The notes under the pieces are model-generated. The model saw nothing but the letters and a program-made list of their open reading frames with translations. It did not search any database and was not told the DNA's origin. From Styela clava (Eukaryota), in assembly GCF_964204865.1 (NCBI RefSeq), contig NC_135255.1:13454001-13518000 (forward strand): a stretch of 64,000 nt of DNA. Reading direction: 5' to 3'. Made by a program: the position numbers and the translations under genes. Shown in pieces: positions 7,001-63,782 of this stretch. Within the stretch, counting starts at the first letter, position 1, and every line of letters starts with the position of its first letter.

Positions 7001-10000
7001 ACACTCATAATTTCAACACCCTTGATCTATTTCACTTACATGTAAATCACCCATAAATATGCTTTGTTCTTCCCAACAATTTTCCAACTAATTTCCGGTA
7101 AAAGAGAAAGATGTTTGTCAGTTAATGAATCCGATAATCTCAATAAGTAGTGAAATAATTTCCTCAATTCTGATAAATTAATCACATCTATATCTGAAAA
7201 AGAAACCAAAATGAAGCTAAAATTGAGAACCTAATATTAATATTAAAATCTACTACAGGGTGGTGGCTAGAAAAACAGTACCAACCTAAAACAACCAAGA
7301 ACCTAAAAGAAAACACACATTTTATTTGTGGTGTCATGTGACCTTCAAATTTTCTGCTTTTTTATCGACCACCCTGGTGTATTTCACATGGTGAATCTTG
7401 ATTTTATAAAAACTACAAAACTTTTACCTATTTTCAAATAAGCTGAAGCACAAGTTTCAAAATACAGAAGTGCAGCATCAATGTCCGATGATTCTTGATT
7501 CAATTGAAACAAAGCTGCTTCATAACAAAGTTTTGCATCAGATGGATTTTCTGTCACAGCTTCTTCAAACACCTTCAAAAAAGTAATACTAAATAGAAGA
7601 AGATCTTCTTGCCTGTTTGTCCTATCCATGACTGTTATAATATCCCATTAAAAATAAGTATGCATCAACGATTTGACTTTTCTCATTTATTACCACAAGA
7701 AAAATAATTTTTTTAAAACTTAACATAATAATTTTGATATTTCAGTGCCTTTTTTATGCTTTTAATGGCTCAGTTATAGTTACATAGTTTATAGCTTTTT
7801 CAAGCTGCAGAATAACATTTCAAACGCCCAAATATCTGTTTTTCAGGCACTTCGTCATTTTCTCACACAATACATTTTGACAACAATACCAAACGCGCAG
7901 AAATTTCACAGTCAAATAGCATGGGAAACAAGTTTTTTGCAATTTCCCATGGCAATTCAAACTACTTCATGACAAAAATAGTACTTTTTTAGCCATTCAA
8001 ATTTAATGAATGGAAACATTCCAACCTCTGAAAGCTAAACGAATGCAACAATTCAATATAAATACTTTGCTTGCTACAGTAGTACAGTAGGCTGCTTAAT
8101 GCAGTAGGTTGGCATGCATAGATGTATTTGCCTCAACTTTATAAATAACAAATAGTAAGATAGAAGTTTCATTGAAATGGAATTGCAACTTGATTAATTT
8201 TAGACAGAAATGTATGCTAGACTGCATTTGAGTTTCAATTCTAATATTTGCTTTAAACAGGCGTTAAATATGAGTAAGGGTATACTATATTGTATGTTTT
8301 TGAGCATTCAATTGCTCGTCAACCAAGTATATTGCAATCAAAGAATTTGCATGCAAATTGAAAATGTCAATACAGAAGAAACGTACCCAATTCCACCACA
8401 ACGAAGTTCACAGGGTGTTCCGGGCAAACGAGGGCCACCTGGTGAAATTGGCCCGAAAGGATCACAGGGGCCCAGAGGACCAATAGGAATTGTTGATTAT
8501 GAAAGAATTGATGCAGCAATAGAATCAGGTAATTTAAATTAATATTGGCCGTAAGCATCAGTGGGGCTTGTACAAAGCCTTGTTTGAAGTGGAAGATCTT
8601 GCAAAAATTACAGATTTTCGTATATAAGAATATATTGAAGTTTACTTCTTATTGTATATATATATATAGTTTACATCTTTTTAAATGATGATATAATGAC
8701 TGTCTGTATGAATGGACTTGGTATAGACAAAACTTAATAATGGGGTTTGTGCAGAACATCCAAGTATGTTATGTTGTGGACTTTATTCACTCATTCATTG
8801 GTAAAATTAAAACCTTTTATCACTAATTTTGATGCTTTTATAAAATTTAGTTTGTTTGATTTGTATTATTACTTCAGCGACCCATACTTTTATATTTAAC
8901 CCATTGCAGCGATAAATGATCTGCGGACAGAAACGGAAGAGAAGATGAATGAAAATATGAATGATCTTCAGCAGAGAATGGGTAATATTTACTAATCTAT
9001 CAATTATGTAAAACTGTTTTGTTAACATTACATGATGGATTTTTTGTCAAAGAGTTTTGTCTCAAACATAAAATTAAATGCAAACTAGAAACAAATGAGA
9101 TTCAGAATCGAGAATTTCCAACATGAATATAAATTATTTTCAAACCGAGATAATTAAATTATTCATTTTCTAAATATAATAGGCAACTGCGAAGTCTTTT
9201 ACAAGAATACTTGTTATCGGATGATACTTCGCGAAACCCAAATGAATTTTGACCGAGCAACACAAGCATGTAGAGATATTGGGATGAATATTGGATACAT
9301 TCAAGATGAAACACATTATCAGAAAATAGCAGAGTTAGTCAGATCAAAATCAACATCATCTGTGACAGGATACTGGACAGGTCTATTGTACAAAAACTCA
9401 GTGAGTATTTAAATTTGATTCATAACGAATATGGTGAACCAGCAAATATTTATCATTTCTATCACATTAAATTATCATTGACTTATCTCGGATTAGGCTC
9501 AGAGCATAGTGCCAAGCATTAGGAATACACTTGCCACAACACCTCTGATTACCCTGCGTGGGTTGGATGGTCCGATCCTGTGTGGGATAACTATGTACAA
9601 GATAATTGCTGGATTCCTCGCTTCCATAGGGTGGTTCACATAACTGCTGGTCAGTTACAGCTTCCTTCACTGTCAAGTTCATGCATCAGAAAACTGGCCA
9701 ACTAACCCCATACCCAACATGTCTGGTACCCGTACAAGAGGCTGCGGTTCCCCATATCAATATTAAGTCGCCTTATCGCCTCACCCTTAATACATATGTA
9801 ACTCCTATCCTATCTATTTCAGCAACTTGTGACACTTTCTGGAAATCCATCACCATTCCCTAAATGGTATCCGAGTAAACCCAATAGTGATGAGCAATAC
9901 AAAAATGTGTACATTTGGGTCCAGAAAGATACAGGAAGTGTATACCACGGCATGGATAACTACATTCCAACAGCCACACAACCTGGAGTGTTATGTCAAA

Positions 10001-12488
10001 TCAAGTATACTTAAGATCATATTAACAAGCATTGTCTACAGATTTCTTATTTGTTAACTTCTCCGATCACACAATACTACAATGCTAGTTATATTGTCAA
10101 TATTCAAATAACGTAAATTGTATCGTGCACCTGATTACAGAATTCCATTTTTTATTATTTTTTCATGATTTGATTATAATCTTGCTTGATATCAATCACA
10201 TATCAAATGAATATGGTCAAAATTAATATTGTTTTTTTTTGGTACTGGCAACAAATATATAAATAATACGAAATTAAAATAGTATGGTCGGAATAAAAGA
10301 AAGAGATGAGAGAAGCATATTTGATTTTTAAAGTACGGTAGTAGTTTTGCGGAAAACATCAAATTTTCATTTCAAGGCAGTCGAAGGATTAATTGACTAA
10401 TTAATTGATTAATTTCAATAATATACCTGTGTGGCAGATAAGCTGTCGCCCTTCTTCACCAAAACATCTGCCCATGTTATAGAAATATCAGTCACTCCCT
10501 TTTTGATCTGGGTTATCGTTTCCTCATTTATTGACAGTTTTTGTATCGCATTAGTCATAGTTTTACACAAAAACCTGTAAAACCAGGAAACTCATTCAAA
10601 CTCATTGAAAACTCATTCAAACTTTTCCTCTCATTTCTAGAATCTTATTATTTTCAGGAACAAATTATTAAAGTTACAGAATTTCTGACATTACATTTTG
10701 ATGAATATGGAATAAAAATTTACATTTAGTTTTGAATTTGCGATAATCTTTAGAATAGAAAGACATAAATCAGAATGATATGTTTTACTTTTTAATGTAT
10801 ATATACTATGTAAATAAAAGCATTCAGTTAATCAGTTGTTTTATTCGTCGATATTGGGCTGATTGGCCATTGTGAAGAAACCAAATACAACGAAGATCAC
10901 ATCATGGGGGATGCAACATAGAATTCAATGATAGAAATGAACGGGTTGTAAAGTACTGGTTAGGATGACAATCAATAGAAGTAAAAAAGAGAATTCCCAA
11001 TTCTTACTTGCAACTATTAGCAGCGTTGTCCCATTTTTGCTGAGATATTTCCAATCGCAATCTTTCCCGAAGTAACTGTAGAGCTGATAATAGATCTTCA
11101 GTTGATGAAGAATCCTTGATAGCAACTGAATCAAACATATAGTAAAATTAAGAATAACTTTGAAAAATTAGAAAATACAAACGACAGAACTGCCCAAATG
11201 AGCGAAGCCATTGAAGAAATCATATATTTCAAATTTATTAAAAAATTAGTTGTGAACGATTATTCACAATATTTCATTACAGCAATGAGATGATGCCTAG
11301 TTTAGGTCGTAATTGTAATTATATCGATTCATACCCTACAGACAGAACAGAAGATATATGGCCTATTTAACTCATGATGACGTCACAAATATAAAAAAAC
11401 TAGTAAAAACAATGTTTATGCTATTCCTAATATTTTCAAATTTTATATGTGTAAATTTTTTCATCTTATCAAACGAAAAAATTCAAAAATAATTTCATGA
11501 TGTATTTGGAATGATAAATTATTTAATTTGGCCACCCCTGACCCGTACCATTATCTGAGTGAACAGGTCATAAAGCGTTGAGAATCACCCCTAATGGGCA
11601 GATTTGATAGTCCATTAGGCTACTCACCGTCAAGGTCAGCATGCAGGTTAGAATAGAAACTTTCGTCACATTTATTCCTTGAATTAAAGTCAAGCTGAAC
11701 TTCTAATCCTGGATAAACTTTGATCCCGAGATAATTTCGAGCATTGCATGCAGAGCTAAAAAGTGACAAATAAATGATATGTTTTTCTGCTCAATATAGA
11801 AATTTGACTCACTCACAAATTCAAATTAATTATGAGAATTACGGATTCAGGTATTTATTTTCAATGAGAAAACAAGGACAAGGGAGTGCTGCTTTGAGAG
11901 CAATAAGATAGAATGTTTCATATTTGATAGGATATTGTGGAGGAAAAAACAATAAAATAGCTTAATAACCACATTACACACCAAAACATATCCTATTATT
12001 CGATTGCTAGTCTACATTAGGTATGGGGAAAAGGTAACCAATTGATTATTTGAAATAGATAATGTGGATGTGGATAAAACTTGGCATTTTTGGACGCTCA
12101 CTCGCAACTTCCGCTGCCTACAACGCCCTGTACAGGTAGCAATTGGGAACTCACTCAAACCCAATCAAAATTTATGAAGCTACTGCTATTCGAACGACCC
12201 CGGATCTTCCCAGTTAGGCATTGCATTTTTATAATACCTTGGGTGAGGTGGGACTTATGGGGCATTAACCCAAGATGTTTAATAATATTAAAGTAAACAT
12301 AAAACTCAATTTTTGTTACATTACCTTATATTTGGAAAAAAGCACTGTGGAAGAGTATTGAAATGCACGACGTTTAAATATGCCAACCAAAGATGATTAA
12401 GATCAGTCAACGTCAAACATCTATTCAAAGAAGATGTAGAAAAGGTGGGAAACTTTTGACATTGTGGAGAGAATTCTTTTACTGTTAC
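4035..12488 (-). CDS. ZFC3H1: ZFC3H1-like (PAXT adaptor) C-terminal HAT/TPR region, copy 1; 12 in-phase exons, about 491 open codons, 5' part missing
   Basis: GT-AG exons 12488-12325, 11755-11628, 11125-11008, 10574-10427, 7572-7428, 7193-7040, 6391-6284, 5764-5569, 5259-5156, 4523-4419, 4213-4174, 4097-4035 join in frame without stops. Motifs match recalled vertebrate ZFC3H1 in order: LWLAYLNVVHFNTLP~LAWLAYIHLIEFNILP; VFEEAVTENP~VWLTAFEKNP; LFHYLL..AYLWVIY~LFRYLL..PYLWLIY; FTAVIRRCITT..DYTFHNQVASIYLSC..LMPYN~FTDLVNRCLVT..NYEFHNRVIFFYLSC..VMPAN; RRSVDAVPYSRELWTD~QRALQKLPLCASLWKD. Confidence 0.75.
4880..5121. mobile_element. Palindromic MITE (copy at 21194-21441)
   Basis: Long imperfect TIRs ACTAGTTGGTGCTCCCGAAGTATGTGAACCAAAAT ... 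ATTTTGATTCACATACTACAGGAGTACCTACTAGT, with internal GGTTAGG/CCTAACC. Lies in an intron of the ZFC3H1-like gene. Confidence 0.7.
6630..6910 (+). mobile_element. Non-autonomous Helitron/Helentron-like repeat (copy about 30580-30860)
   Basis: 5' GTTT/GTCT microsatellite, 3' GAGAC-G-GTCTC palindrome followed by terminal CTAG|T. Confidence 0.45.
8057..8154 (+). promoter_or_regulatory. Putative TATA box and non-coding first exon of collectin gene 1
   Basis: TATAAATA at 8057, donor GTAAGA at 8155, acceptor AAACAG before 8261. The same arrangement precedes all five exon-1 copies (donor GTAAGT at about 42872). Confidence 0.5.
8270..10014 (+). CDS. Mini-collectin 1 (signal peptide, short collagen, neck, C-type lectin domain), intact, 246 aa
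   Basis: Exons 8270-8528, 8910-8981, 9183-9400, 9823-10014 (phases 1,1,0) give 741 nt in frame. Hydrophobic N-terminus; GVPGKRGPPGEIGPKGSQGPRGPIG; heptad neck; C..CY..F..A..AC..YWTGL..W.P.KPN..GVLCQ. Confidence 0.9.
9495..9790 (+). mobile_element. tRNA-derived SINE-like repeat in collectin intron 3
   Basis: Family members elsewhere show B-box-like GTTCGAATC/GGTTTGAATCC and a shared core CCATAGGGTGGTTCAC. Orthologous intronic copies at about 33492, 39676, 44250, 50355, 55413, 59574 and 63878. Independent copies at 42258-42403 (-) and 46215-46435. Confidence 0.6.
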
Positions 12489-12548
12489 CTGTAGAAATGT
12501 TTTCGAATGTTAGAGGAACAAAAGTCGTAAAATAAGGTCAGTCTAGAT

Positions 12549-15350: not shown

Positions 15351-15479
15351 AAAACAAGTCAAACAATCTTGTGGCATTATGAAATTAGAGGGGTAGCAAA
15401 CCAACTCCTGGCAACTACTTGACCAATAGAATGCAATTTGTTCAAATTGGTTCATACTGTTCTCTTACCTTGCCTGTGT

Positions 15480-22883: not shown

Positions 22884-23343
22884 TAGTTTGGATTTCTGCC
22901 CATTGACAAATCACCCTTGCCTACTATGTCTCTTTAACTAATATCCCGAAATGAAACGAATAGATTTCTCCCAAAGTGATTTAATCCAGATATCAGTAAG
23001 ACAAAGTGACCTGACAAACAATAAAGATGAATATTAAAATCAGTACAGGCAACCAGGCACAATACAAAGCAAGAATATACCAATTCACTTACATTTAAAT
23101 GAGACTTTGTCAGAACAGATTATCCCAATGTAAGAAACTTAAGAAATAGAATATTCATACCCAATGACTATAGCACCATTAACAAGCTTATGAGAACAGA
23201 TCTAAAGACAGACTAAAGCTCTAGACATTTAACCATAACAAGAAGTAATCAAGTAATCAGCCAATAATCGCGATGCAGTGAACCATACGTAAACACACCA
23301 AAAGTAAGTAGTACCAAGATAAATCAGTCAAATGTTCAAACCA
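22884..23343 (-). repeat. 3' LTR
   Basis: No differences from 28864-29323 seen by eye. Ends TGGTTTG...CAAACTA on the - strand. Confidence 0.95.
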
Positions 23344-23419
23344 CTCCCCCCCAGTCTATGAATGCAATGAAAAAGACGATAATATTGAACATTGTTGATT
23401 CGGAGTAACTGATATGAGA

Positions 23420-26400
23420 TTAGATGTCTTTCAACCCACACTGTAGCTCTTCTTTGGTCGCAATTAGACAAAGTTTATGTATTGGTCGATTGTATAAATT
23501 CCCATCGCTGTCTTTGATTGTAACACTTCTCACCAAGCCATCTGAACTGGGCATAATGTTGTGAACCAGTGCTTTTTTCCATAAACCTCTGGGTGCACTT
23601 CCGCCTTTAAATCCAGGTTGAAGAATTAATACGTAATCTTCCACTTGAAGATTGCGTCTTGTTCGAAACCATTTGTTAGCAAGTAATAGCTGAGGCGGTA
23701 TGTGTTTCATCCATGTTTTCCAGAACACCTCAACTCTGTTTTCCGCCACTTTTAGCATGTCTCGTGGATTGAATCTCTCTTCTTGTGTAGTTTGAGGGAC
23801 TACCTGCTTTTCATATGGATGTAAAAGAGTATTGCCAGTAATACAATTATATTCCAAAGGGTTTCCATCTGGGAAAAGTGGTCGACTATTGATGATATAA
23901 GTAATTTCGTTGAGAACAGTTGTCCATTCTTCGTAGGTCATAAGAGCCCTGCTGTAATTCACCACTGATGCATCGAGTGCTTTGCGAACCGAGTTGATAA
24001 GCGATTCTACTACTCCATTCATATGTGACGCGTAAGGCACATTATATTTCCAATCAAATTTCGTTTGATTCTCTGCCATCTCATGTTGAATCAACTGAAA
24101 ATTCCATTTCTCGATCCATTCCTTGATAGGCGTTTGACTAGCTTGAAATGTAGTACCTCCGTCGGAAAATACAAAAGCACGATGAATTCCCCTTATAGAT
24201 ACAAATCGTCTCCATGCCCGAAGGAACGAATTAGTATCCAGAGCCAGACACAGTTCCAGATGAATACAACGAGTGGTTGCACATGTAATAATTAAAACAG
24301 ACGCGTTGATAACTACATTTCGAGATTGCTTTACTTTCAAGTATCCGAAAAAATCCATTGCTACAGAATTGAATGGTGCCATCTGTGGTTGCATTCGAAA
24401 TGAAGGAAGTTCTCCCATGCGTTGCTGTAGCAACTTTCTACGACGAATCCTGCAAAATATACACATTGATGCTATTGATTTTAAGAGTATTCTTCCACCA
24501 ATAAGAACAATACCGTCATTCTTCATATTTGCCAATATAACTCGATACCCTTGATGTAAGACCTTTTTATGATAGAACACTCCAAGAAGACGAACGAGGG
24601 AATGTTCGCCCGGAAGCACGACTGGATGCTTCATTTCCATATATAAATCAGTTCTAGTCAGTCTTCCACCAATACGAAGAATTCCGTGAGAATCGAATAA
24701 CAAGTCTAATTTCCATAGAGTTTTGACAGCCTTCCCAAATTCATCAATCATAGATTTTTGACAAATTCTGAATATACACAATTTTGCTTTCTCTATGTAT
24801 TGTACGACATCGGCAGGTTTAAATTCCAAATTGACAAATGATTTTTGCTGAAATGCACCCTTCATCCAAGCTGTCGCTCTTAGCAAGTCTTGCCATGAAG
24901 AAAAATTATCCGCTAAATCATTATCATTTTGATAAGGTAAATCTGCTTTAACGACGTTGAATTGTCTTTTTCCGCGATATGCTTTTGACTTAGTTGGTGG
25001 TTTTTCTTCCAATATTTCTTGACGTAATTCATCTAATTTTAAGTCATCATCATTCGGCCAATATTCCATTGGTTGCCTTAGAAATTCAGGTCCTTCATGC
25101 CAAATTGTAAGCTTCTTGCAGGAAATAGGTTTTGTTAAACAATCTGCAGCATTAAGAAGACTTGGAATGAATTTGACTTCTTTTGTTAGATTCTTATGTG
25201 TATCTTGAAATTCTTGTACTCTTGAAGCAACGAATGGTTTGAATTTTCCAGATTGGGAATTCAACCAATAAATAACAACTTTGCTGTCTATCCAGAAATA
25301 TTTGAATGCAATATTGTACGGTAGTGCTTTACTTATTTCATGCACCAATCTGCTCATGCCTATTGCTCCCATTAGCTCCTTTCTTGGAGTACTTTTGTGT
25401 TTGAGTGGCGCCACAAATCCTTTTGCTGCAACGAATGTTAGCTTAACTCCACCTGTTGTAGGCCACCGTAAGAACACACAAGTGCCATAGGCTAAATCTC
25501 CACCGTCTGAAAATGCGTGCAGTTGAGGAGGTCCAGTTGTGTTTTCAGGTTTTAGACGTCTTGGAGTTGAAACTTGAGCTAACTTGGACATTTCTTGAAC
25601 ATTGTTATACCAGCATTTGACCACATCATCTGGCAAAGTTTGGTCCCAGCTAAATCCATCTGCCCAGATCTTTTGAAGATCTATTCTATACTGCATTGTG
25701 ACTGGAAGTAAATAACCCAGAGGGTCCCACAATTTCATTACACATGCTAATGCTTTTCTTTTAGAAAATCCTGTTTGCATGAAAGAAATGTCTTTGAATT
25801 TTGAACTGAAACTGTCATCAGTTTTATTCCAGGAATGACCAAGAACATCAACAACTTTTTCACCAGGATTTTGATCTACTTCAGGATGGTTTGAGTTCCA
25901 AATCTTTATAGAGAATTTTCCACGAATAAGTATTTGATCAACATCATTGATAACCTTGTTTGCAAGAATGTGATTCGAAACAGAATGGCTGACGTCATCA
26001 ATGTATGTATCTTTGTCCAATACAACAGCTCCAAGAGGATGATCTTTTCGAAATTTATCGGCTAAAAATTTAATTGTAAAGCATGCCAAGTCAGGACTAG
26101 ATTTATCTCCGAACATAACCCGAAGCCATTGAAAGATTGTTGGTTGCAACGATGAATCACCATAGCGCCAAAGGAAACGATGAAATTTCTGATCGACTTC
26201 TGCCATTTGAATTTGATTAAACATTTTCGATATATCACCAGCAATAGCCACACTATCAGCTCGCCATGCCATGAAACATCTGAACAAAGAATTCGCAAAG
26301 CTGGGGCCTTTCTCTAAACCATCATTGAGACATGTGCCCTTAAAAGGACACGCAGAATCAAATACTATTCTTAATTTTGTTGAGGTTTTATCCGGACGCT

Positions 26401-28750
26401 CTACGATACGATGATTGAGGTACCATGCATTTTCAACTTTAGCCGTTTTCGTTTCAACCGGTGTTAGTCGTCGTACCACGCCTCGCTGAAGCAGATTTTT
26501 AATCTCCATATTATACTCTTCCGTTTTTCCTTTTCTATACAATTCTTGTTCCCGTTTTTTCATTTGTTCATACGCCTTCTCAAAATTGTTGTGCAATTTT
26601 TCTGGGAAACCAGGTTTCCATGGCATTTTGACACAAACTCGGCCATCAGCACTAATATTGGTTGTCGCTTTTACATGTTTGATAAATGCTGATTCTGCAA
26701 TTTCTGAGTTAGAACAAACACACAAAGTTGTGGGTTGCACTCCAAGAACTTCACCATGGAAAAACTTGCGCAACTCTTCATTTTCTAATGATGAAAAACT
26801 ATTAATATTTGCTACATGATTGAAAGATCGTTGCGGTGCTTGAATAATGCCTCCATATAGATAGCATCCAAGAGATGTGAAAGCTGCTGAAGGATGATTA
26901 TCGGGATCAATTGGCGAACGTAATGTATGCATTGTTTGAATTAAAGGTGCATAATCTCTACCAACAAGAACATCGACTGTTTTTTGCCCAACTGGTATTT
27001 TATCCTGAATTCCTCTTAGATAATCAAACTGTTTAAGAATAGATGGCGGAATTGGTGTAACATCGTGACAAGGTTTTCTCACAGCCGTAACTCTGATATC
27101 GAATATCTGGTCTCGTGAAAGAGGTCTAACTTTTAAATTATAATCTTCAGAAGGTTCTTCATGAATGGCTCCTCCTGCGACACCAAACCGAATTGTTCCA
27201 TGACCTATTGCCTTTTGTTTCAATGATTTTGCAAAATTACGTCTTACCAAAGAATGGTTACTGCCACCATCAAGAAAGAAATTTGCCTTGATCCATGTTT
27301 TGTCACTCGCCTGCACTTCTGCAACAAGTAATGGAGAATAATCCAAATTAAAAGTGCTCAATTGTCTTGAATGCATCTGAGATTGGTTGAATACTGCTGC
27401 ATTAGAGTGAATATGTTGACTTTCCAAATTCGAGTCGTTCATACCAGAATTTCTCATTGTATTGTAATTTCCCTGTACGTTTCCGGGACATAATGACCAA
27501 TGATGTTGTCTTCGGTTACAATTTACACAGCTATCGGCTATTGTTCTTGCACAATTTCTTGCAAAGTGAGTTCCTAGACATATAAAACATCTTCGATCAT
27601 CTGCTATAAAGTTTTTTCTTTCAGGAATTGATAGGTTTTGATATTTGTTGCAGTCTATAAGGCGGTGCTGAATTCCACATCCAAAAATACAAGTGACTGT
27701 CCTTCGACGTGGCTGAACTGAACCCATGTTATCATTCTCGTCTGTAGCATGATTAACCGTATTGAAATTAGATCTTGGCGACTGGTTTTGTCTCGGTCGA
27801 AACCTCATATTCTCGCTTTGACTGATAAAGTTACCAGATATTTCCAACGCTGTAGCTTCAGATCTCAGAAAATTCGTTATAGATTCCAAGTTATGATTAC
27901 CTTTGCTGGAACTATTATATCGCAGTGCAGTGTCTGCATCTAGACACTCTAAGGCTCTATTGACAGAAATAACCGAGTTTGCATCCTGTTTTAACCCAAG
28001 ATCTTCCATACGTCGGCAGAAGAGAGAAATTTCGTGAGCTAGTCGCCTAAGGTTCGCTGGATTACGAGAGGTCTTATATAAAGGTTTTATTTGCTCGTAT
28101 TGCTTGATTACTTCACGTTGAACTACTGATTTAGGAATACGCTCTTCCAGGCGTTCCCATACACTTGAAATTGATTTACAGTCACATATCATTGTTTGAT
28201 ATTCGTTTGGCATTGCACCATTGCGTAAAAGCCATGAAATTTGCACTAAATCATCCGTAATTCTAGCATGGTGCATTATATGTGTGAAACGTTCTTTCCA
28301 GGTATAAAAGTCTACTTTTTGTCCGTTCCAGCATGGCGGATCCATACCACATAACTTAATCATAGGAGGATCATTATTATAATTGTTTTGAGTGGTTACA
28401 AGAGATGATATCACCGGCTTTATATCTAGTTTGTCTTCATATTTCTCAAAATCGATTGCAATCTTGTTTTCCAAACGTAAAATTTCTTCACTAAATTTGG
28501 ATATAACGGGTTTTTCCTCACTTTGTGTAGTACTGTCTTCTTCAATTAGAGCCAATTCCATAGTATCAATTAGACAGACCAAAAATGCTATTTTATCGTT
28601 AGCATCATGAAACAGTATTTTGACCTTTTCAAAATCTCTTCTTTCCAGAGAGTGCTCAAATCGTGTTAAAATTCTTTCCAAATTTACTTTGAGTACCGGA
28701 AACTTACTCTTGAGTTGTTTGAAATTCTGACCTTGAAAATATTCTGCCAT
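23420..28750 (-). CDS. BEL/Pao Gag-Pol polyprotein, 1776 aa
   Basis: Three Cys/His knuckles (CIFGCGIQHRLIDC, CFICLGTHFARNC, CVNCNRRQHHWSLC), protease FLDGGS, RT (AGDISKMF, YIDD), Pao RNase H (LHAFSD, ELMGA, WIDS), integrase (H..H..CIFC, MDFFG, FSDGG, VESL). Order PR-RT-RH-IN. Confidence 0.97.
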   Translation of the reverse strand: MAEYFQGQNFKQLKSKFPVLKVNLERILTRFEHSLERRDFEKVKILFHDANDKIAFLVCLIDTMELALIEEDSTTQSEEKPVISKFSEEILRLENKIAIDFEKYEDKLDIKPVISSLVTTQNNYNNDPPMIKLCGMDPPCWNGQKVDFYTWKERFTHIMHHARITDDLVQISWLLRNGAMPNEYQTMICDCKSISSVWERLEERIPKSVVQREVIKQYEQIKPLYKTSRNPANLRRLAHEISLFCRRMEDLGLKQDANSVISVNRALECLDADTALRYNSSSKGNHNLESITNFLRSEATALEISGNFISQSENMRFRPRQNQSPRSNFNTVNHATDENDNMGSVQPRRRTVTCIFGCGIQHRLIDCNKYQNLSIPERKNFIADDRRCFICLGTHFARNCARTIADSCVNCNRRQHHWSLCPGNVQGNYNTMRNSGMNDSNLESQHIHSNAAVFNQSQMHSRQLSTFNLDYSPLLVAEVQASDKTWIKANFFLDGGSNHSLVRRNFAKSLKQKAIGHGTIRFGVAGGAIHEEPSEDYNLKVRPLSRDQIFDIRVTAVRKPCHDVTPIPPSILKQFDYLRGIQDKIPVGQKTVDVLVGRDYAPLIQTMHTLRSPIDPDNHPSAAFTSLGCYLYGGIIQAPQRSFNHVANINSFSSLENEELRKFFHGEVLGVQPTTLCVCSNSEIAESAFIKHVKATTNISADGRVCVKMPWKPGFPEKLHNNFEKAYEQMKKREQELYRKGKTEEYNMEIKNLLQRGVVRRLTPVETKTAKVENAWYLNHRIVERPDKTSTKLRIVFDSACPFKGTCLNDGLEKGPSFANSLFRCFMAWRADSVAIAGDISKMFNQIQMAEVDQKFHRFLWRYGDSSLQPTIFQWLRVMFGDKSSPDLACFTIKFLADKFRKDHPLGAVVLDKDTYIDDVSHSVSNHILANKVINDVDQILIRGKFSIKIWNSNHPEVDQNPGEKVVDVLGHSWNKTDDSFSSKFKDISFMQTGFSKRKALACVMKLWDPLGYLLPVTMQYRIDLQKIWADGFSWDQTLPDDVVKCWYNNVQEMSKLAQVSTPRRLKPENTTGPPQLHAFSDGGDLAYGTCVFLRWPTTGGVKLTFVAAKGFVAPLKHKSTPRKELMGAIGMSRLVHEISKALPYNIAFKYFWIDSKVVIYWLNSQSGKFKPFVASRVQEFQDTHKNLTKEVKFIPSLLNAADCLTKPISCKKLTIWHEGPEFLRQPMEYWPNDDDLKLDELRQEILEEKPPTKSKAYRGKRQFNVVKADLPYQNDNDLADNFSSWQDLLRATAWMKGAFQQKSFVNLEFKPADVVQYIEKAKLCIFRICQKSMIDEFGKAVKTLWKLDLLFDSHGILRIGGRLTRTDLYMEMKHPVVLPGEHSLVRLLGVFYHKKVLHQGYRVILANMKNDGIVLIGGRILLKSIASMCIFCRIRRRKLLQQRMGELPSFRMQPQMAPFNSVAMDFFGYLKVKQSRNVVINASVLIITCATTRCIHLELCLALDTNSFLRAWRRFVSIRGIHRAFVFSDGGTTFQASQTPIKEWIEKWNFQLIQHEMAENQTKFDWKYNVPYASHMNGVVESLINSVRKALDASVVNYSRALMTYEEWTTVLNEITYIINSRPLFPDGNPLEYNCITGNTLLHPYEKQVVPQTTQEERFNPRDMLKVAENRVEVFWKTWMKHIPPQLLLANKWFRTRRNLQVEDYVLILQPGFKGGSAPRGLWKKALVHNIMPSSDGLVRSVTIKDSDGNLYNRPIHKLCLIATKEELQCGLKDI

Positions 28751-28863
28751 TGTTAGTTGGCATTCTTGCTTTGATGTATTGCTGAATCCTCGAAAGGTTG
28801 AAGAAGAACTGCTTGATTCAGACTCCAGTTTGTAGGTGTAGGTGCAGTATCATTAAATGTCAC

Positions 28864-43003: not shown

Positions 43004-44756
43004 ATGAGTAAGGGTATACTATATTGGATGTTTTTGAGCATTCAATTGCTCGTCAATCAAGTATATTGCAATCAAAGAATTTGCATGCAAATTGAAAATG
43101 TCAATGCAGAAGAAACGTACCCAATTCCACCACAACAAAGTTCACAGGGTGTTCCGGGCAAACGTGGACCACCTGGTGAAATTGGACCAAAAGGATCACA
43201 GGGGCCCAGAGGACCAAAAGGAATTGTTGATTATGAAAGAATTAATGCAGCAATAGAATCAGGTAATTTAAATTAATATTGGTCGTAAGCATCAGTGGGG
43301 CTTGTACAAAGCCTTGTTTGAAGTGGAAGATCTTGCAAAAATTACAGATTTCCGTATATAAGAATATACTGAAGTTTACTTCTTATTGTATATATATATA
43401 TATATAGTTTACATCTTTTTAAATGATGATATAATGACTGTCTGTATAAATGGACTTGGTATAGACAGAACTTAATAATTGGGTTTGTGCAGAACATCCA
43501 AGTATGTTATGTTGTGGACTTCATTTACTCATACATTGGTAAAATTAAAACAATGTATCCCTAATTTTGATGCTTTTATAAAATTTAGTTTGTTTGATTT
43601 GTATTATTACTTCAGCGACCCATACTTTTTTATTTAACCCATTGCAGCGATAAATGAGCTGCGGACAGAAACGGAAGAGAAGATGAATAAAACTATGAAT
43701 GATCTTCAGCAGAGGATGGGTAATAGTTACTAAACTATCAATTATGCAAAATTTTTTTGTTAACATTACATGATGAATTTTTTGTCAAAGAGTTTTGTCT
43801 CAAATATAAAATCAAATGCAAACTAGAAACCTAAAAATTGTTCGACAAATATGATTTAGAATCTTAGAATTCCCAACACAAAATTAATTTTTTCTCAAAC
43901 AGAGATAAATGAAATTTTCATTTTCTAAATATAATAGTCAACTGTGATGTCCTTCACATGAATAATTGTTATCGGATGATACTTCGTGGAACCAAAATGA
44001 ATTTTGACCAAGCAACACAAGCATGTGGAGATATTGGTATGAATATTGGATACATTCAAGATGGAACACATTATCAAAAAATAGCAGAGTTAGTCAGATC
44101 AAAATCAACATCATCTCTTACAGGATACTGGACAGGACTATTGTACATAAACTCAGTGAGTATTTAAATATGATTCATAACGAATATGGTGAACCAGCAA
44201 TTTTTTATCATTTCTATCACATTAAACTATCATTGACTTATCTCGGCTTAGGCTTAGAGCATAGTGCCAAACGTTAGGAATACGCTTGCCACAACACCTC
44301 TGATTACCCTGGGTGGGTTGGATGGTCCGATCCTGTGTGGGATAACTATGTACCAGATAATTGCTGGATTCCTCGCTTCCATAGGGTGGTTCACATAACC
44401 ACTGTCCACTGGTCAGTTACAGCTTCCTTCACCGTCAAGTTCATGCATCAGAAAACTGGCTAACTAACCCCATAACCAACATGACTGGGTTCCCCATATC
44501 ATTATTAAGTCACCTTATCGTCTCACCCTTGATACATATGTAACTCCCATCCTATCTATTTCAGCAACTTGTGACACTTTCTGGAAATCCATCACCATTC
44601 ACTAAATGGCATCCGGGTACACCCAGAAGTGGTGAGCAATACAAAAATGTGTTCATTTATGTCAGGAAAGATACAGGAAATGTTTACCAGGGCATGGATA
44701 ACTACATTCCAACACACAAACAAGCTGGAGTGTTATGTCAAATCATGAATACTTAA
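43004..44756 (+). CDS. Mini-collectin 3, intact, 246 aa
   Basis: Exons 43004-43262, 43648-43719, 43938-44155, 44565-44756 are in frame. Confidence 0.88.
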
Positions 44757-50060: not shown

Positions 50061-50894
50061 TCAACTGCGAAGTCTTTTACAAGAATAATTGTTATCGGAT
50101 GGAACTTCGCAAAACCCAAATGAATTTTGACCAAGCAACACAAGCATGTAGAGATATTGGTATGAATATTGGATACATTGAAGATGAAACACAGTTAGTC
50201 AGATCAAAATCAACATTATCTCATACAGGATACTGGACAGGACTATTGTACATAAACTCAGTGAGTATTTAAATTTGATTCATAATGAATATGATGAACT
50301 ACTGCTTCTTCATCATTTCTTCTCATTAGATTATCCATGATTCAGCTCAGTTTAGGCTCGGCGGTGTGTATAACATGATGCTAAGCGTTGAGAAAATGCT
50401 CGCCACAGCACCTCTGATTATCCTGCGTGGGTTCGCAGGCCCGAATCCTGTGTGGGTTAATTATGTACAAGATGAATGCAGGACTCCTCGACTTTGTAGG
50501 GGGATTCACATAACCGCTGGTCGGTTACGTCTTCCTTCACCATCAAGTCCATGCATCCAAGAACAAAAAATGGCTGACTAATCACATACCCAACATGAAC
50601 TGTTAATCGGACAAAAGGTCAAAGTCTTCCATATGATTAATATTAAACTACCTTATTGTCTCCCCCCTGATTAATATGTAACTCCTATCTTATTTATTTC
50701 AGCAACTTGTGACTCTTTCTGGAGATCCATCACCATTCACTAGATGGCATCCAAGTAAACCCAATATTGGTGCGCAATACAAAAATGTGTACATTTGGGT
50801 CAATAAAGATACAGGAAATGTATACCAGAGCATGGATAACTACATTCCAACACACAAACAAGCTGGAGTGTTATGTCAAATCATGAATACTTAA
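50061..50894 (+). other. Orphan CTLD exon pair B2
   Basis: Exons 50061-50260 and 50703-50894 are open with the same 18-nt deletion. The neck remnant was removed by a deletion near 49910. Confidence 0.75.
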
Positions 50895-53346: not shown

Positions 53347-55318
53347 ATGAGTAAGGGTATACTATATTGTATGTTTTTGAGCATTCAATTGCTCGTCAAT
53401 CAAGTATATTGCAATCAAAGAATTTGCATGCAAATTGAAAATGTCAATGCAGAAGAAACCTACCCAATTCCACCACAACAAAGTTCACAGGGTGTTCCGG
53501 GCAAACGTGGACCACCTGGTGAAATTGGCCCGAAAGGATCACAGGGGCCCAGAGGACCAAAAGGAATTGTTGATTATGAAAGAATTAATGCAGCAATAGA
53601 ATCAGGTAATTTAAATTAATATTGGTCGTAAGCATCAGTGGGGCTTGTACAAAGTCTTGCAAAAATTACAGATTTCCATATATAAGAATATATATTGAAG
53701 TTTACTTCTTATTGTATATATATATAGTTTAAGAAATCTTTTTAAATGATGATATAATGACTGTCAGTATGGACTTGGTTTAGACCAGGGATGGCGAACC
53801 ACTGACCCGCGGGTCACAAAGTAACCCAACGCGTTTTATTCTTGACCCGCCAAGGCACTAATAAAATAAAAATGCTAACATATCACTGATGAGAGGTGAT
53901 AAAACCGGTCTTAAATTAATCTAACAATAACTAAACTATTATAATGTACCGTCAGTTGGTCATGACTGCGATCGCTCATATTTAAGTTGTTAATTTCCGG
54001 GCCGGTATGGTAATTTCCTAAACCTTTAATCTTGGGCGCATGTGTGCACCGTTCGTTATTCAACTATTGGCTCTGACATAACAATGCAATTGCTACTTTG
54101 CATTTTATTAGTTTCTCGCCTACAATGCCGTTGAGAAATCAAAATATTCCAGACTTGAAATAAAAACCGAGAAATCTGAAACAACAATGGGGCAGTGTAA
54201 AAGTTCCTTAATGTGGTTGAAAGCTGATCTAAAAATATAAAACTATCAGAGTGGAATTCTTGCCAAACTCTTTGGATCCGGAAAAGAATTTGCCGCATCG
54301 TCCTAAGCGTTTTTGGCGATTCATATGCGTGTTTTCGTACTCTGATTCCATAAAATCGAGTGAAATAAAAAGTCCCCGATTAAAGTGATGCATAAGTGAA
54401 ACCCAAAACTACAACAACAGCAACAGAAGCTTATAAGATTTGTTTCAGAAGTTTCTCATAGATACAAACATTGATTAAATATATGTGACCCACTCTCTTC
54501 TGTTCCGCGATAAAAATATAATTTTTGACCCATTCATTGGAAAAGGTTCGCCATCCCTGATAGACAAAACTTAATAATGGGGTTTGTGCAGAACATCCAA
54601 GTATGTTATGTTGTGAACTTTATTCACTCATTCATTGGTAAAATTAAAACCATGTATCACTAATTTTGATGCTTTTATAAAATTTAGTTTGTTTGATTTG
54701 TATTATTACTTCAGCGACCTATACTTTTATATTTAATCCATTGCAGCGATAAATGATCTGCGGACAGAAATGGAAGAGAAAATGAATAATGTCAACAAAA
54801 CCATGAATGATCTTCAGCAGAGGATGGGTAATAGTGCACTAAACTATCAATTATGTAAAACTGTTTTGTTAACATTACATGATGAATTTTTTGTCAGAGT
54901 TCTCAAACATAAAATTAAATGCGAATTGGAAACACAAATAAGATTTGAATTTATAATTCTTAACAAATAGAACTAAATGTAATTTTCATTTTCTAAATAA
55001 AATAGTTAACTGCGATGATTCAGAATCGAGAATTTCCAACATTAATATAAATTATTTTCAAACCGAAATACCTAAATTTTTCATTTTCTAAATATAATAG
55101 TCAACTGCGAAGTCTTTTACAAGAATAATTGTTATCGGATGAAACTTCGCAAAACCAAAATGGATTTTGACCAAGCAACGCAAGCATGTAGATATATTGG
55201 TATGAATATTGGATACATTGAAGATGAAACACATTACCAAAAAATAGCAGAGTTAGTCAGATCAAAATCAACATTGTTTCAAACAGGATACTGGACAGGG
55301 CTATTGTACATAAACTCA
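53347..55318 (+). CDS. Mini-collectin 4, exons 1-3 open but own exon 4 deleted
   Basis: Exons 53347-53605, 54747-54827 (+9 nt), 55101-55318. Intron 3 is fused near 55695 to the paralog of about 11719. Confidence 0.7.
53786..54559. mobile_element. hAT MITE in collectin intron 1
   Basis: TIR CAGGGATGGCGAACC...GGTTCGCCATCCCTG; imperfect TSD (GTTTAGAC / ATAGAC); empty site GTATAGAC in genes 1-3. Confidence 0.85.
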
Positions 55319-59280: not shown

Positions 59281-60114
59281 TCAACTGCGAAGTCTTTTAC
59301 AAGAATAATTGTTATCGGATGGAACTTCGCAAAACCCAAATGAATTTTGACCAAGCAACGCAAGCATGTAGAGATATTGGTATGAATATTGGATACATCG
59401 AAGATGAAACACAGTTAGTCAGATCAAAATCAACATTATCTCATACAGGATACTGGACAGGACTATTGTACATAAACTCAGTGAGTATTTAAATTTGATT
59501 CATAATGAATATGATGAACTACTGCTTCTTCATCATTTCTTCTCATTAGATTATCCATGATTCAGCTCAATTTAGGCTCGGCGGTGTGTATAACATGATG
59601 CTAAGCGTTGAGAAAATGCTTGCCACAGCACCTCTGATTATCCTGTGTGGGTTCGCAGGCCCGAATCCTGTGTGGGTTAATTATGTACAAGATGAATGCA
59701 GGACTCCTCGACTTTGTAGGGGGATTCACATAACCGCTGGTCGGTTACGACTTCCTCCACCATCAAGTCCATGCATCCAAGAACAAAAAATGGCTGACTA
59801 ATCACATACCCAACATGAACTGTCAATCGGACAAAAGGTCAAAGTCTTCCATATGATTAATATTAAACTACCTTATTGTATCCCCCCTGATTAATATGTA
59901 ACTCCTATCTTATTTATTTCAGCAACTTGTGACTCTTTCTGGAGATCCATCACCATTCACTAAATGGCATCCAAGTAAACCCAATATTAGTGCGCAATAC
60001 AAAAATGTGTACATTTGGGTCAATAAAGATACCGGAAGTGTATACCAGGGCATGGATAACTACATTCCAACACACAAACAAGCTGGAGTGTTATGTCAAA
60101 TCATGCATACTTAA
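59281..60114 (+). other. Orphan CTLD exon pair B3
   Basis: Exons 59281-59480 and 59923-60114 are open. A neck remnant with its donor ends at 59004. Confidence 0.75.
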
Positions 60115-62134: not shown

Positions 62135-63782
62135 ATGAGTAAGGGTATACTATATTGGATGTGTTTGAGCATTCAATTGCTCGTCAATCAAGTATATTGC
62201 AATCAAAGAATTTGCATGCAAATTGAAAATGTCAATGCAGAAGAAACATACCCAATTCCACCACAACGAAGTTCACAGGGTGTTCCGGGCAAACGTGGAC
62301 CACCTGGTGAAATTGGCCCGAAAGGATCACAGGGGCCCATAGGACCAAAAGGAATTGTTGATTATGAAAGAATTAATGCAGCAATAGAATCAGGTAATTT
62401 AAATTAATATTGGTCGTAAGCATCAGTGGGGCTTGTACAAACTCTTGCAAAAATTACAGATTTCCATATATAAGAATATATTGAAGTTTACTTCTTATTG
62501 TATATATATATAGTTTACATCTTTTTAAATGATGATATAATGACTGTCAGTATGGACTTGGTTTAGACCAGGGATGGCGAACCACTGACCCGCGGGTCAC
62601 AAAGTAACCCAACGCGTTTTATTCTTGACCCGCCAAGGCACTAATAAAATAAAAATGCTAACATATCACTGATGAGAGGTGATAAAACCGGTCTTTAATT
62701 AATCTAACAATAACTAAACTATTATAATGTACCGTCAGTTGGTTATGACTGCGATAGCTCATATTTAAGTTGTTAATTTCCGGGCCGGTATGGTAATTTC
62801 CTAAACCTCTAATCTTGGGCGCATGTATGCACCGTTCGTTATTCAACTATTGGCTCTGACATAACAATGCAATTGCTACTTTGCATTTTATTAGTTTCTC
62901 GCCTACAATGCAGTTGAGAAATCAAAATATTCCAGACTTGAAATAAAAACCGAGAAATCTGAAACAACAATGGGGCAGTGTAAAAGTGCCTTAATGTGGT
63001 TGAAAGGTTCGCCATCCCTGATAGACAAAACTTAATAATGGGGTTTGTGCAGAACATCCAAGTATGTTATGTTGTGAACTTTATTCACTCATTCATTGGT
63101 AAAATTAAAACCATGTATCACTAATTTTGATGCTTTTATAAAATTTAGTTTGTTCGATTTGTATTATTACTTCAGCGACCCATACTTTTATATTTAATCC
63201 ATTGCAGCGATAAATGATCTGCGGACAGAAACGGAAGAGAAAATGAATAATGTCAACAAAACCATGAATGATCTTCAGCAGAGGATGGGTAATAAGCGAC
63301 TAAACTATCAATTATGTAAAACTGTTTTGTTAACATTACATGATGAATTTTTTGTCACAGAGTTCTCAAACATAAAATTAAATGCAAATTGGAAACACAA
63401 ATAGGATTTGAATCTATAATTCCCAACAAATAGAACTAAATGTAATTTTCATTTTCTAAATAAAATAGTCAACTGCGATGATTCAGAATCGAGAATTTCC
63501 AACATTAATATAAATTATTTTCAAACCGAAATACCTAAATTTTTCATTTTCTAAATATAATAGTCAACTGCGAAGTCTTTTACAAGAATAATTGTTATCG
63601 GATGGAACTTCACAAAACCCAAAATGAATTTTGATCAAGCAACACAAGCATGTAGAGATATTGGTATGAATATTGGATACATTCAAGATGAAACACATTA
63701 TCAAAAAATAGCAGAGTTAGTCAGATCAAAATCAACATTATCTAAAACAGGATACTGGACAGGACTATTGTACATAAACTCA
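62135..63782 (+). pseudogene. Mini-collectin 5, +1 frameshift in exon 3; exon 4 would lie beyond the window
   Basis: Exons 62135-62393, 63208-63288, 63564-63782 (219 vs 218 nt). ACCCAAAATG leads to TGA at 63632-63634. Confidence 0.65.
62569..63020. mobile_element. Internally deleted copy of the 53786 hAT MITE
   Basis: Same TIRs and insertion site; about 320 bp shorter. Confidence 0.85.

What the first reader, a model, noticed from the sequence alone, without database searches (positions are those of the whole stretch)
8270..63782. Tandem array of mini-collectins whose ligand-binding exon diversifies almost only by amino-acid changes
Hand alignment of exon 4 of gene 1 (9823-10014) against gene 2 (33826-34017) gives 19 nt differences in 192. 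There are 14 amino-acid replacements, four of them double-nucleotide codon changes (W>Y, Q>T, Y>K, D>F), and only 1 synonymous change. The adjacent ~420-nt intron differs at only about 11 positions plus one indel. The changes cluster at the EPN-equivalent loop, the beta-3 strand and the WND-equivalent strand, which form the binding face in CTLDs. The collagen exon is nearly invariant. Inference: a germline-encoded repertoire of variable pattern-recognition heads on a constant complement-recruiting stalk, under diversifying selection (innate immunity, or possibly allo/gamete recognition).
Basis: partly seen in the sequence, partly recalled or inferred. Interest (0 to 1): 0.88.

Follow-up and report, generated by a model that had tools for sequence, protein, structure and literature searches.

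The report
Diversifying mini-collectin gene array, sea squirt
The sea squirt Styela clava carries about 30 tandem copies of a small collectin-like gene whose predicted binding surface changes amino acids faster than its silent sites, which fits a germline repertoire of recognition proteins, but the statistical support is modest and expression is untested.

Summary
Exon 4 of gene 1 and gene 2 differ at 19 of 192 nt: 14 replacements, four of them two-base codon changes, and 1 synonymous change. Intron 3 differs at 13 of 422 nt plus one indel.

The window is Styela clava chromosome DNA. It holds 8 of about 30 tandem copies. At least 17 of the 30 are intact; in the window 3 are intact and 5 are truncated or frameshifted.

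Each intact gene encodes 246 aa: signal peptide, Cys-rich start, nine Gly-X-Y triplets carrying a conserved P-G-K-R-G-P (the MASP-binding motif type), a helical neck and a C-type lectin-like domain (CTLD). The fold matches CL-K1, SP-A and MBP. The CTLD lacks the calcium/sugar-binding residues and one canonical disulfide.

Family-wide dN/dS is 0.15 for collagen, 0.5 for exon 3 and 1.35-1.6 for exon 4. It is about 2.2-2.6 on the binding-face loops.

Paralogues exchange sequence heavily. My null simulations show that the standard site-model test is badly inflated here. Calibrated p values are about 0.05 for the exon and 0.01 for the face.

Verdict: diversifying selection plus gene conversion is likely (about 0.7). 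The complement-recruiting function is inferred, and expression could not be tested.

The parts
8270..10014 (+). G1, an intact 4-exon mini-collectin gene. Exons: e1 8270-8528 (signal, Cys-rich N-terminus, 9 GXY triplets); e2 8910-8981 (neck); e3 9183-9400 (CTLD N-terminal half); e4 9823-10014 (CTLD C-terminal half, binding face, stop).
   Evidence: All splice sites are AG/GT and the ORF is 741 nt. The translation is identical to RefSeq XP_077970036.1 (P0001).
32270..34017 (+). G2, an intact 4-exon copy. Exons: e1 32270-32528, e2 32899-32970, e3 33179-33396, e4 33826-34017. The last collagen Gly is replaced (GPKRIV).
   Evidence: L006
39382..40218 (+). G3, a 5'-truncated copy. It has e3 39382-39581 (18-nt in-frame deletion removing HYQKIA) and e4 40027-40218. 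There is no e1 and only the last 22 nt of e2. A LINE-like reverse-transcriptase remnant lies upstream.
43004..44756 (+). G4, an intact 4-exon copy. Exons: e1 43004-43262, e2 43648-43719, e3 43938-44155, e4 44565-44756.
   Evidence: The translation is identical to XP_077969861.1 (P0025).
50061..50894 (+). G5, a 5'-truncated copy of the G3 type. It has e3 50061-50260 and e4 50703-50894.
53347..55318 (+). G6, a copy lacking exon 4. Exons: e1 53347-53605, e2 54747-54827 (81-nt variant), e3 55101-55318. Homology to the gene ends at about 55695 and resumes in sequence that lies 1.7 kb downstream of G1.
   Evidence: NCBI models it as a 183-aa product (P0022).
59281..60114 (+). G7, a 5'-truncated copy of the G3 type. 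It has e3 59281-59480 and e4 59923-60114.
62135..63782 (+). G8, a frameshifted copy. Exons: e1 62135-62393, e2 63208-63288 (81 nt), e3 63564-63782 (219 nt, a +1 frameshift that brings stops). Its e4 lies just past the window end.
   Evidence: L009
8414..8494 (+). The collagen-like stretch G49-V75 (nine Gly-X-Y triplets). [quoted passage not shown]
   Evidence: Sequence. Of the 23 copies whose exon 1 was translated, 21 read PGKRGP and 2 read GKHGP. The motif definition is from PMC2856262. Pfam Collagen scores 20.3 bits, below its cut-off of 27.2.
9868..9975 (+). Codons for residues 199-234, the hypervariable binding-face region of the CTLD. It covers the loop aligned to EPN (K202-P203-N204), the end of beta-3 (W215, Q217), the beta-3/beta-4 loop (Y224, H225), the WND-equivalent (D228) and the following loop (I231, A234).
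   Evidence: Site posteriors, variability table, N:S counts, HMMER alignment to an EPN lectin, secondary structure of the model.
9504..9814 (.). A dispersed repeat that fills most of intron 3. It is shared by all copies of the array.
   Evidence: Copies about 75% identical lie on at least 7 other chromosomes or contigs. No tRNA-like part was found.
22884..29323 (-). A BEL/Pao LTR retrotransposon inserted between the G1 and G2 duplication units. It accounts for part of their 24-kb spacing.
   Evidence: The 460-bp LTRs are 100% identical. An uninterrupted 1775-aa ORF carries Peptidase_A17, RVT_1 and DUF5641.

Best explanation
This is a birth-and-death tandem array in Styela clava. It has about 30 copies over 340 kb; at least 17 are intact, and 8 lie in this window. 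The genes encode small secreted collectin-like proteins.

The constant part consists of a signal peptide, an N-terminal Cys pair, nine Gly-X-Y triplets with a conserved P-G-K-R-G-P, and a 35-residue helical neck. It is under purifying selection. It most likely builds trimers or oligomers that can dock a MASP-type protease (inferred).

The C-terminal CTLD has the collectin head fold. It has lost the canonical Ca2+/sugar-binding ligands and the C2-C3 disulfide. Its upper loops and beta-3/beta-4 face, all encoded by exon 4, vary between paralogues mainly by amino-acid replacement.

The diversity is generated by point mutation and re-assorted among copies by gene conversion and unequal crossing-over. 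It is probably retained by diversifying selection. The result would be a germline repertoire of recognition heads on one effector stalk, most plausibly humoral non-self recognition.

Shown: the array, the gene structure, the fold, the motifs, the mosaicism, and dN/dS above 1 on the face. Inferred: secretion, oligomerisation, MASP docking, ligand class, immune role and expression.
For: Array and gene models:
- The copies and their exons were mapped.
- Nine of my spliced models equal RefSeq proteins exactly.

Fold:
- In the AlphaFold model the CTLD has pLDDT above 90 and a helix spans residues 77-111.
- Foldseek top hits are the CL-K1 trimer, SP-A neck+CRD, MBP-A, tetranectin and tunicate TC14, with probability 1.0 and E about 2e-8.

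Constraint gradient (dN/dS):
- Collagen 0.15, neck 0.44, exon 3 0.55, exon 4 1.40.
- The one-ratio model (M0) gives omega 0.48 for exon 3 and 1.35 for exon 4.

Binding face:
- N:S changes are 112:13 on the face and 128:52 in the rest of the CTLD.
- Synonymous changes per codon are similar in the two (0.41 and 0.50), so a mutational hot spot is unlikely.
- 13 of the 15 sites with posterior above 0.9 lie in exon 4.

Tests:
- With gamma rate variation allowed, the neutral model against the selection model still gives 2dlnL = 18.7.
- The result holds on an alternative tree and under M7/M8/M8a.
- Calibrated against a fully neutral, recombining, rate-heterogeneous null, the face dN/dS of 2.16 was reached in 1 of 139 simulations. 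Exon-wide values were reached in 7 of 139.
- Against the fitted neutral-plus-constrained null, the exon-wide value was reached in 0 of 62.

The genes are maintained:
- Exon 4 has no nonsense changes, where 7.4 would be expected from the synonymous count.
- Exons have far fewer indels than introns.

Motif and context:
- The MASP motif type is defined in PMC2856262 and is present in all copies.
- The S. clava genome paper reports expanded collectin/MBL genes, with many of the expanded complement genes highly expressed at metamorphosis (PMC7540406).
Against: - Gene conversion is pervasive. The PHI test over the whole gene gives p<0.001, and G1 versus G2 is a mosaic of 3% and 14% diverged segments.
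- Null simulations without any positive selection gave naive M1a/M2a 2dlnL values up to 60, with apparent omega of 2-4. The large likelihood ratios therefore carry little weight.
- Nonsynonymous positions of exon 4 are no more diverse than intron 3 or the 3' flank.
- In 12 independent sister pairs pN/pS is only 1.16, which is not significant.
- The 'face' was delimited after I had seen the data.
- Five of the eight window copies are defective.
- The canonical Ca2+/sugar ligands are absent, so the ligand class is unknown.
- Trimer prediction gave no verdict.
- Xaa in the MASP motif is Arg, whereas the motif usually has an aliphatic residue there.
Confidence: 0.6

Rival explanations
1. There is no positive selection. 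Exon 4 is simply the least constrained part of a fast-duplicating family. Relaxed constraint (omega near 1 at many sites), among-site rate heterogeneity and frequent gene conversion together mimic omega above 1.
For: - Null simulations reproduce naive LRT values up to 60.
- Diversity at codon positions 1+2 of exon 4 (0.120) is no higher than in intron 3 (0.130).
- Sister-pair pN/pS is 1.16, not significant.
- Exon-wide calibrated p is only about 0.05.
- Many copies are pseudogenes.
- The rest of the CTLD also has a high dN/dS of 0.84 by counting.
Against: - The face N:S of 121.5:17.5 (dN/dS 2.16) was reached in 1 of 139 fully neutral simulations.
- The fitted neutral-plus-constrained null never reached the observed exon-wide ratio (0 of 62).
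- The simulations produce about 60 synonymous changes, where only 35.5 are seen.
- M2a+G still beats M1a+G by 18.7.
- Nonsense changes and indels are purged from exon 4.
- The signal rises when truncated copies are left out: 2.08 with 20 copies against 1.58 with 26.
Confidence: 0.25
2. The diversification is real but the proteins are not complement-coupled immune receptors. They could act in metamorphosis or tissue remodelling, in tunic or extracellular-matrix binding, or in gamete or self recognition, with the CTLD binding proteins rather than glycans.
For: - The CTLD lacks EPN/QPD and a conserved WND Asp. Many such CTLDs bind non-sugar ligands (my own knowledge of the CTLD superfamily).
- The genome paper links the expanded complement-type genes to metamorphosis.
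- The nine-triplet collagen is very short for a MASP-docking stalk.
Against: - The Lys-containing motif is invariant in a strongly constrained collagen exon.
- The architecture and fold match complement-activating collectins best.
- Collagenous lectins of Styela plicata are secreted during inflammation, as cited in PMC5465252.
- A paralogue array, rather than allelic polymorphism at one locus, is not the usual layout of self-recognition loci (my own knowledge).
Confidence: 0.12
3. The array is mostly a silent remnant of duplication. The copies are not expressed, and the intact ORFs are young duplicates that have not yet decayed.
For: - Five of the eight window copies, and at least six of the 30 overall, are visibly defective.
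- No transcript-derived protein of this family turned up in the protein collections; every hit was from the NCBI genome annotation.
Against: - Purifying selection on the collagen and neck parts (dN/dS 0.15-0.44).
- No nonsense changes in 28 copies of exon 4, where about 7 are expected.
- Splice sites are conserved in at least 17 copies.
- Copies are up to about 10-14% diverged at neutral sites yet still intact.
Confidence: 0.03

Closest known systems
Vertebrate collectins that activate complement (MBL, CL-K1/collectin-11)
   Same: The domain order is the same: Cys-rich N-terminus, collagen-like region, alpha-helical neck, C-terminal CTLD. The best structural matches are the CL-K1 trimer, SP-A and MBP-A. 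The collagen region contains a Pro-Gly-Lys-X-Gly-Pro of the MASP-binding type.
   Different: There are only nine Gly-X-Y triplets. No EPN/QPD motif and no conserved WND Asp are present, so the canonical Ca2+/sugar site is absent. The C2-C3 disulfide is absent. Pfam Lectin_C and Collagen both score below their cut-offs. There are about 30 tandem paralogues with a hypervariable face instead of one or a few conserved genes.
Tunicate collagenous lectins and MBL-like genes (Styela plicata collectin-like proteins; Ciona MBL-like; the 25 'MBL' genes and the expanded 'collectin' family reported for S. clava)
   Same: The same animal group and the same general protein class. Expansion in S. clava is already published (PMC7540406). 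The S. plicata proteins are secreted in inflammation, as cited in PMC5465252. One member of this array was once named 'mannose-binding protein A-like'.
   Different: I found no paper that describes this array, its exon-4 hypervariability, the missing sugar-binding residues or the gene conversion. Whether the published 25 genes include these copies is unknown. Most of the RefSeq loci here carry LOC numbers of a newer series than the earlier S. clava entries.
Diversifying CTLD multigene families (snake-venom C-type lectin-like proteins, rodent Ly49/NKR-P1 clusters, expanded invertebrate CTL families)
   Same: Tandem paralogues. Accelerated amino-acid change on the loops and beta-3/beta-4 face of a CTLD, often one that no longer binds sugar through Ca2+. 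Birth-and-death evolution with pseudogenes. (My own knowledge, not tested here.)
   Different: Here the variable CTLD sits on a collagen/neck stalk with a MASP-type motif. This is a soluble collectin layout, not a membrane receptor or a venom heterodimer.
Halocynthia roretzi glucose-binding lectin (GBL), the ascidian lectin-pathway recognition molecule
   Same: An ascidian CTLD protein that works with MASP, as cited in PMC5465252.
   Different: To my knowledge GBL lacks a collagen domain. No sequence comparison was made here.

Membership tests
Collectin (collagen-containing C-type lectin) | Collagen-like Gly-X-Y region after a Cys-containing N-terminal segment | tested here: met
   Residues G49-V75 form nine triplets. 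C22 and C27 lie upstream. The region is very short, and Pfam Collagen scores 20.3 bits against a cut-off of 27.2.
Collectin (collagen-containing C-type lectin) | Alpha-helical coiled-coil neck that trimerises the heads | tested here: inconclusive
   The model has a helix at residues 77-111, at pLDDT 50-70. Structural matches include neck+CRD entries 4yli, 3par and 1htn. The homotrimer prediction gave no verdict.
Collectin (collagen-containing C-type lectin) | C-terminal C-type lectin-like fold | tested here: met
   Foldseek probability 1.0 with E 2e-8 to 1e-7 against many CRDs, and pLDDT above 90. Pfam Lectin_C scores 21.3 bits, just under its cut-off of 22.6.
Collectin (collagen-containing C-type lectin) | Ca2+-dependent sugar site: EPN or QPD motif plus WND with conserved Asn/Asp ligands | tested here: not met
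   HMMER aligns K202-P203-N204 to the EPN of a mosquito lectin. Across copies this position reads K/T/R/A - P - N/R. The WND-equivalent D228 has 7 different residues. Biochemical binding was not tested.
Collectin (collagen-containing C-type lectin) | Four canonical CTLD cysteines (C1-C4 and C2-C3 disulfides) | tested here: not met
   Only C140 and C241 (the C1-C4 pair) and the long-form pair C113-C121 are present. There is no Cys in beta-3 or after beta-4 in any copy, nor in the distant S. clava relatives.
Complement-activating recognition molecules (MBL/ficolin/CL-K1 type) | [quoted passage not shown] | tested here: inconclusive
   The sequence P51-G-K53-R-G-P56 is present, with Lys in the X position. 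It is conserved in 21 of the 23 copies whose exon 1 was translated; the other two read GKHGP. The motif is as defined in PMC2856262. Xaa is Arg rather than an aliphatic residue. MASP binding cannot be tested with these tools.
Gene family under diversifying selection | dN/dS above 1 at a defined set of sites, after allowing for recombination and rate variation | tested here: inconclusive
   The binding face has dN/dS 2.16-2.64, with calibrated p about 0.01. Exon 4 as a whole has 1.35-1.6, with p about 0.05. M2a+G over M1a+G gives 18.7. However, the naive LRT is inflated, and sister-pair pN/pS is 1.16, not significant.

The most novel reading that the evidence does not exclude
Styela, among the closest invertebrate relatives of vertebrates, may run a germline-diversified humoral recognition system. 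Dozens of variable, non-sugar-binding CTLD heads would be re-assorted by gene conversion and perhaps mixed into heterotrimers. All would sit on one invariant mini-collagen stalk that docks MASP and fires complement. This would be a collectin-based functional analogue of 'variable head, constant effector stalk' immunity.
Probability: 0.2. Interest if true: 0.75.

Novelty: new variant of a known kind. Interest (0 to 1): 0.45.

Why it matters
Tunicates lack antibodies but have the lectin pathway of complement. A large array of collectin-like genes with a constant stalk and a variable, non-canonical binding face would show how a chordate without adaptive immunity widens its recognition range. It would also give about 17 natural variants for testing which residues set ligand specificity in a CTLD.

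The work carries a methodological warning as well. In a tandem family that undergoes conversion, the standard site-model tests gave 'significant' positive selection in simulations that contained none.

Tried and rejected
The half of the region that I did fetch held no copies beyond L001-L030.
- Homotrimer of residues 76-246: complex prediction gave no verdict (score 0.02). This counts neither for nor against trimerisation.
- Naive M1a/M2a, M7/M8 and M8a/M8 likelihood ratios of 51-70: rejected as decisive after the null simulations.
- Per-site diversity of exon 4 against introns: no excess.
- PHI test within exon 4 alone: not significant, p=0.27.
- Pfam on single exons: only weak hits.
- Pfam on the minus-strand ORFs that flank G1, which another note calls a ZFC3H1-like host gene: no hit.
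- tRNA-derived SINE check of the intron-3 repeat: none found.
- Technical failures: two maximum-likelihood runs timed out because the machine has one core. The M0 fits inside the simulations stuck at their starting value; I discarded them and redid them. The M2a fit for exon 3 alone looked unconverged and is not used.
- Supplements of the genome paper are not held.
- Joined spliced models: not sent to any search or folding tool. Exons were searched by reference, and the database protein P0001, which is identical to the G1 model, was used instead. Exons were joined only inside local scripts, for the codon analyses.
Full report
**What is there**

The window is AT-rich animal DNA. It lies at C6:13,454,001-13,518,000 of a 377-Mb assembly. 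The organism is Styela clava: the proteins encoded here are RefSeq entries of that species, which agrees with earlier scan notes.

At 8270-10014 there is a four-exon gene with canonical AG/GT splice sites and a 741-nt ORF. A library search with exon 3 alone returned a 246-aa protein, P0001 = XP_077970036.1 ('uncharacterized protein LOC144424528'). It is identical to my spliced model.

Exons were searched by reference, and P0001 stood in for the joined product. Exons were joined only inside local scripts, for the codon analyses.

**The array**

BLAST of the four exons finds eight copies in the window.
- G1, G2 and G4 are intact.
- G3, G5 and G7 have only exon 3 (with an 18-nt in-frame deletion) and exon 4. 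They lie downstream of a LINE-like remnant.
- G6 has lost exon 4.
- G8 has a +1 frameshift in exon 3.

The genome holds about 30 copies, all on the + strand, between 13.268 and 13.605 Mb. The half of that region that I could fetch contained no additional copy. At least 17 copies have a complete uninterrupted ORF. Nine models equal RefSeq proteins exactly.

Large-scale self-alignment shows segmental duplication units 80-98% identical. A young BEL/Pao retrotransposon sits between the G1 and G2 units.

**The protein**

From the N-terminus:
- a hydrophobic start;
- cysteines C22 and C27;
- nine Gly-X-Y triplets (G49-V75);
- a predicted helix at 77-111;
- a CTLD at 112-246, modelled at pLDDT above 90.

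Foldseek's best matches are the CL-K1 trimer, DCIR2, CD23, SP-A neck+CRD, tetranectin, MBP-A and tunicate TC14. By sequence the domain is divergent: Pfam Lectin_C scores 21.3 bits against a cut-off of 22.6, and Collagen 20.3 against 27.2.

The collagen part contains P51-G-K53-R-G-P56. [quoted passage not shown] Of the 23 copies whose exon 1 was translated, 21 read PGKRGP and 2 read GKHGP.

Two canonical CTLD features are missing.
- The residues that HMMER aligns to EPN are K-P-N in G1, and K/T/R/A - P - N/R across copies. The WND-equivalent Asp is the most variable position.
- The beta-3/post-beta-4 disulfide is absent in all copies and in the distant S. clava relatives.

So the architecture is collectin-like, but membership as a classical Ca2+-dependent lectin fails.

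For exon 4, G1 versus G2:
- 19 of 192 nt differ;
- 18 differences are nonsynonymous and 1 is synonymous;
- there are 14 replacements, four of them two-base codon changes.

Intron 3 has 13 mismatches plus one indel in 422 nt. Within the pair, N versus S gives p=0.051 and N versus intron 3 gives p=1e-4.

The pair is a mosaic. Divergence by segment is 2.8% in the 5' flank, 13.8% in intron 1, 14.1% in intron 2, 3.1% in intron 3 and 4.6% in the 3' flank. For 11 of the 14 replacements, both states recur in other paralogues. Most of the G1/G2 contrast is therefore a re-assortment of family-wide variants, not new mutation since the duplication.

**Family-wide pattern**

Mean pairwise dN/dS is 0.15 for the collagen part, 0.44 for the neck, 0.55 for exon 3 and 1.40 for exon 4.

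My codon-likelihood code reproduced IQ-TREE's M0 likelihood, which validates it.
- For exon 4 (26 copies) M0 gives omega 1.35.
- M1a versus M2a gives 2dlnL 51, with 28% of sites at omega 4.1.
- M7/M8 gives 55.9 and M8a/M8 gives 51.0. On a tree built from the flanking non-coding DNA, M1a/M2a gives 70.
- Of the 15 sites with posterior above 0.9, 13 lie in exon 4: residues 201, 202, 204, 206, 209, 215, 217, 224, 225, 228, 231, 234 and 245.

These sites fall in the loop aligned to EPN, the end of beta-3, the beta-3/beta-4 loop, the WND-equivalent strand and the following loop.

Parsimony counts on 20 copies give N:S of 112:13 on residues 199-210 plus 215-234, against 128:52 elsewhere in the CTLD. 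Synonymous changes per codon are similar in the two regions.

**Why these numbers need discounting**

- Recombination is strong across the gene: PHI observed 0.226 against 0.387 for permuted data, p<0.001.
- Exon 4 fits its own tree far better than the flank tree (-1315 against -1440).
- Diversity at codon positions 1+2 of exon 4 (0.120) does not exceed intron 3 (0.130) or the 3' flank (0.178).
- Allowing gamma rate variation lowers the test statistic to 18.7.
- Most important, 19 simulations with no site above omega 1, gamma rates and two discordant trees gave naive 2dlnL from 0 to 60 (median about 21). Their apparent omega was 2-4 at 20-30% of sites.

I therefore calibrated simpler statistics by simulation.
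- Against a fully neutral recombining null (139 replicates): exon-wide parsimony dN/dS 1.58 was reached 7 times, M0 omega 1.35 was reached 7 times, and face dN/dS 2.16 was reached once.
- Against the fitted neutral-plus-constrained null, the exon-wide value was never reached in 62 replicates.
- In 12 independent sister pairs, exon-4 pN (0.0645) exceeds flank divergence (0.042; p=6e-5), but it does not significantly exceed pS (0.056).

The genes are clearly maintained. Exon 4 has no nonsense change where 7.4 are expected, and exons have far fewer indels than introns.

**Reading**

The most likely account is a birth-and-death family in which gene conversion shuffles binding-face variants and selection keeps them diverse. 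I put real positive selection on the face at about 0.7. The main rival, relaxed constraint plus conversion and rate heterogeneity, I put at about 0.25.

The functional chain is inference from architecture and motif: secreted oligomer, MASP docking, non-self recognition. The missing Ca2+/sugar ligands mean the ligand class is open. The trimer prediction gave no verdict.

**What is known**

The S. clava genome paper lists the collectin family among the expanded families. It counts 25 MBL genes and says many of the expanded complement genes are highly expressed at metamorphosis (PMC7540406). Collagenous lectins of S. plicata are secreted in inflammation, as cited in PMC5465252.

I found no paper describing this array, its variable exon or its non-canonical CTLD. 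The only close relatives in the 1.8-billion-protein library are other S. clava proteins. Some of these have longer collagen regions and PGKxGP; others have no collagen. All share the same unusual cysteine pattern.

I class it as a new variant of a known kind, of moderate interest.

Noticed in passing
window 22884-29323 (-): A BEL/Pao LTR retrotransposon with 100% identical 460-bp LTRs and an uninterrupted 1775-aa ORF (Peptidase_A17, RVT_1, DUF5641). It is a very recent insertion between the G1 and G2 duplication units. I observed it only.
   Followed up: partly
window 9504-9814, and the same part of intron 3 in all copies: Most of intron 3 is a dispersed repeat. Copies about 75% identical lie on at least 7 other chromosomes or contigs. 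It has no tRNA-like part. It was already in the ancestral gene, because every copy carries it.
   Followed up: partly
window 36743-38953, 14320-16747, 47880-49895, 56437-58872: A 2.2-2.4 kb repeat with a LINE-type reverse-transcriptase remnant (FADD motif, 37785-38332). It lies directly upstream of the 5'-truncated copies G3, G5 and G7, and also downstream of G1. It probably marks the event that removed exons 1-2.
   Followed up: partly
P0021, P0028, P0033 (RefSeq isoforms of array genes outside the window); same junction as window 9400/9401: Several RefSeq models end in ...NSVSI or ...NSVSTGI, meaning they read through the exon-3 donor into intron 3. If real, these isoforms would carry the stalk and half a CTLD without the variable exon.
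   Followed up: no
window 8210-8269: An in-frame upstream ATG adds 20 residues (MYARLHLSFNSNICFKQALN) ahead of the signal peptide. RefSeq uses this start for the 269-aa models of other copies (P0016).
   Followed up: no
window 54747-54827 and 63208-63288: Exon 2 comes in two lengths: 72 nt, and 81 nt with three extra codons (NVN) in the neck. This would shift the heptad register of the coiled coil in those copies.
   Followed up: no
P0007, P0014, P0004, P0005, P0008, P0011 (S. clava proteins on other chromosomes): These are distant paralogous families with the same CTLD type, lacking the C2-C3 disulfide. Two have longer collagen regions with PGKKGP or PGKLGP. Four have no collagen at all. At E<1e-3 the exon-3 search also hit nematode multi-CTLD proteins, two unnamed ENA proteins and four hits I did not check.
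   Followed up: partly
window 5557-7629 and 10415-10570 (-): Minus-strand ORFs flank G1 on both sides. Another note on this window reads them as exons of a ZFC3H1-like host gene, with the collectin gene inside one of its introns. Pfam gave no hit for the ORFs I tried, and none overlaps exon 4.
   Followed up: partly
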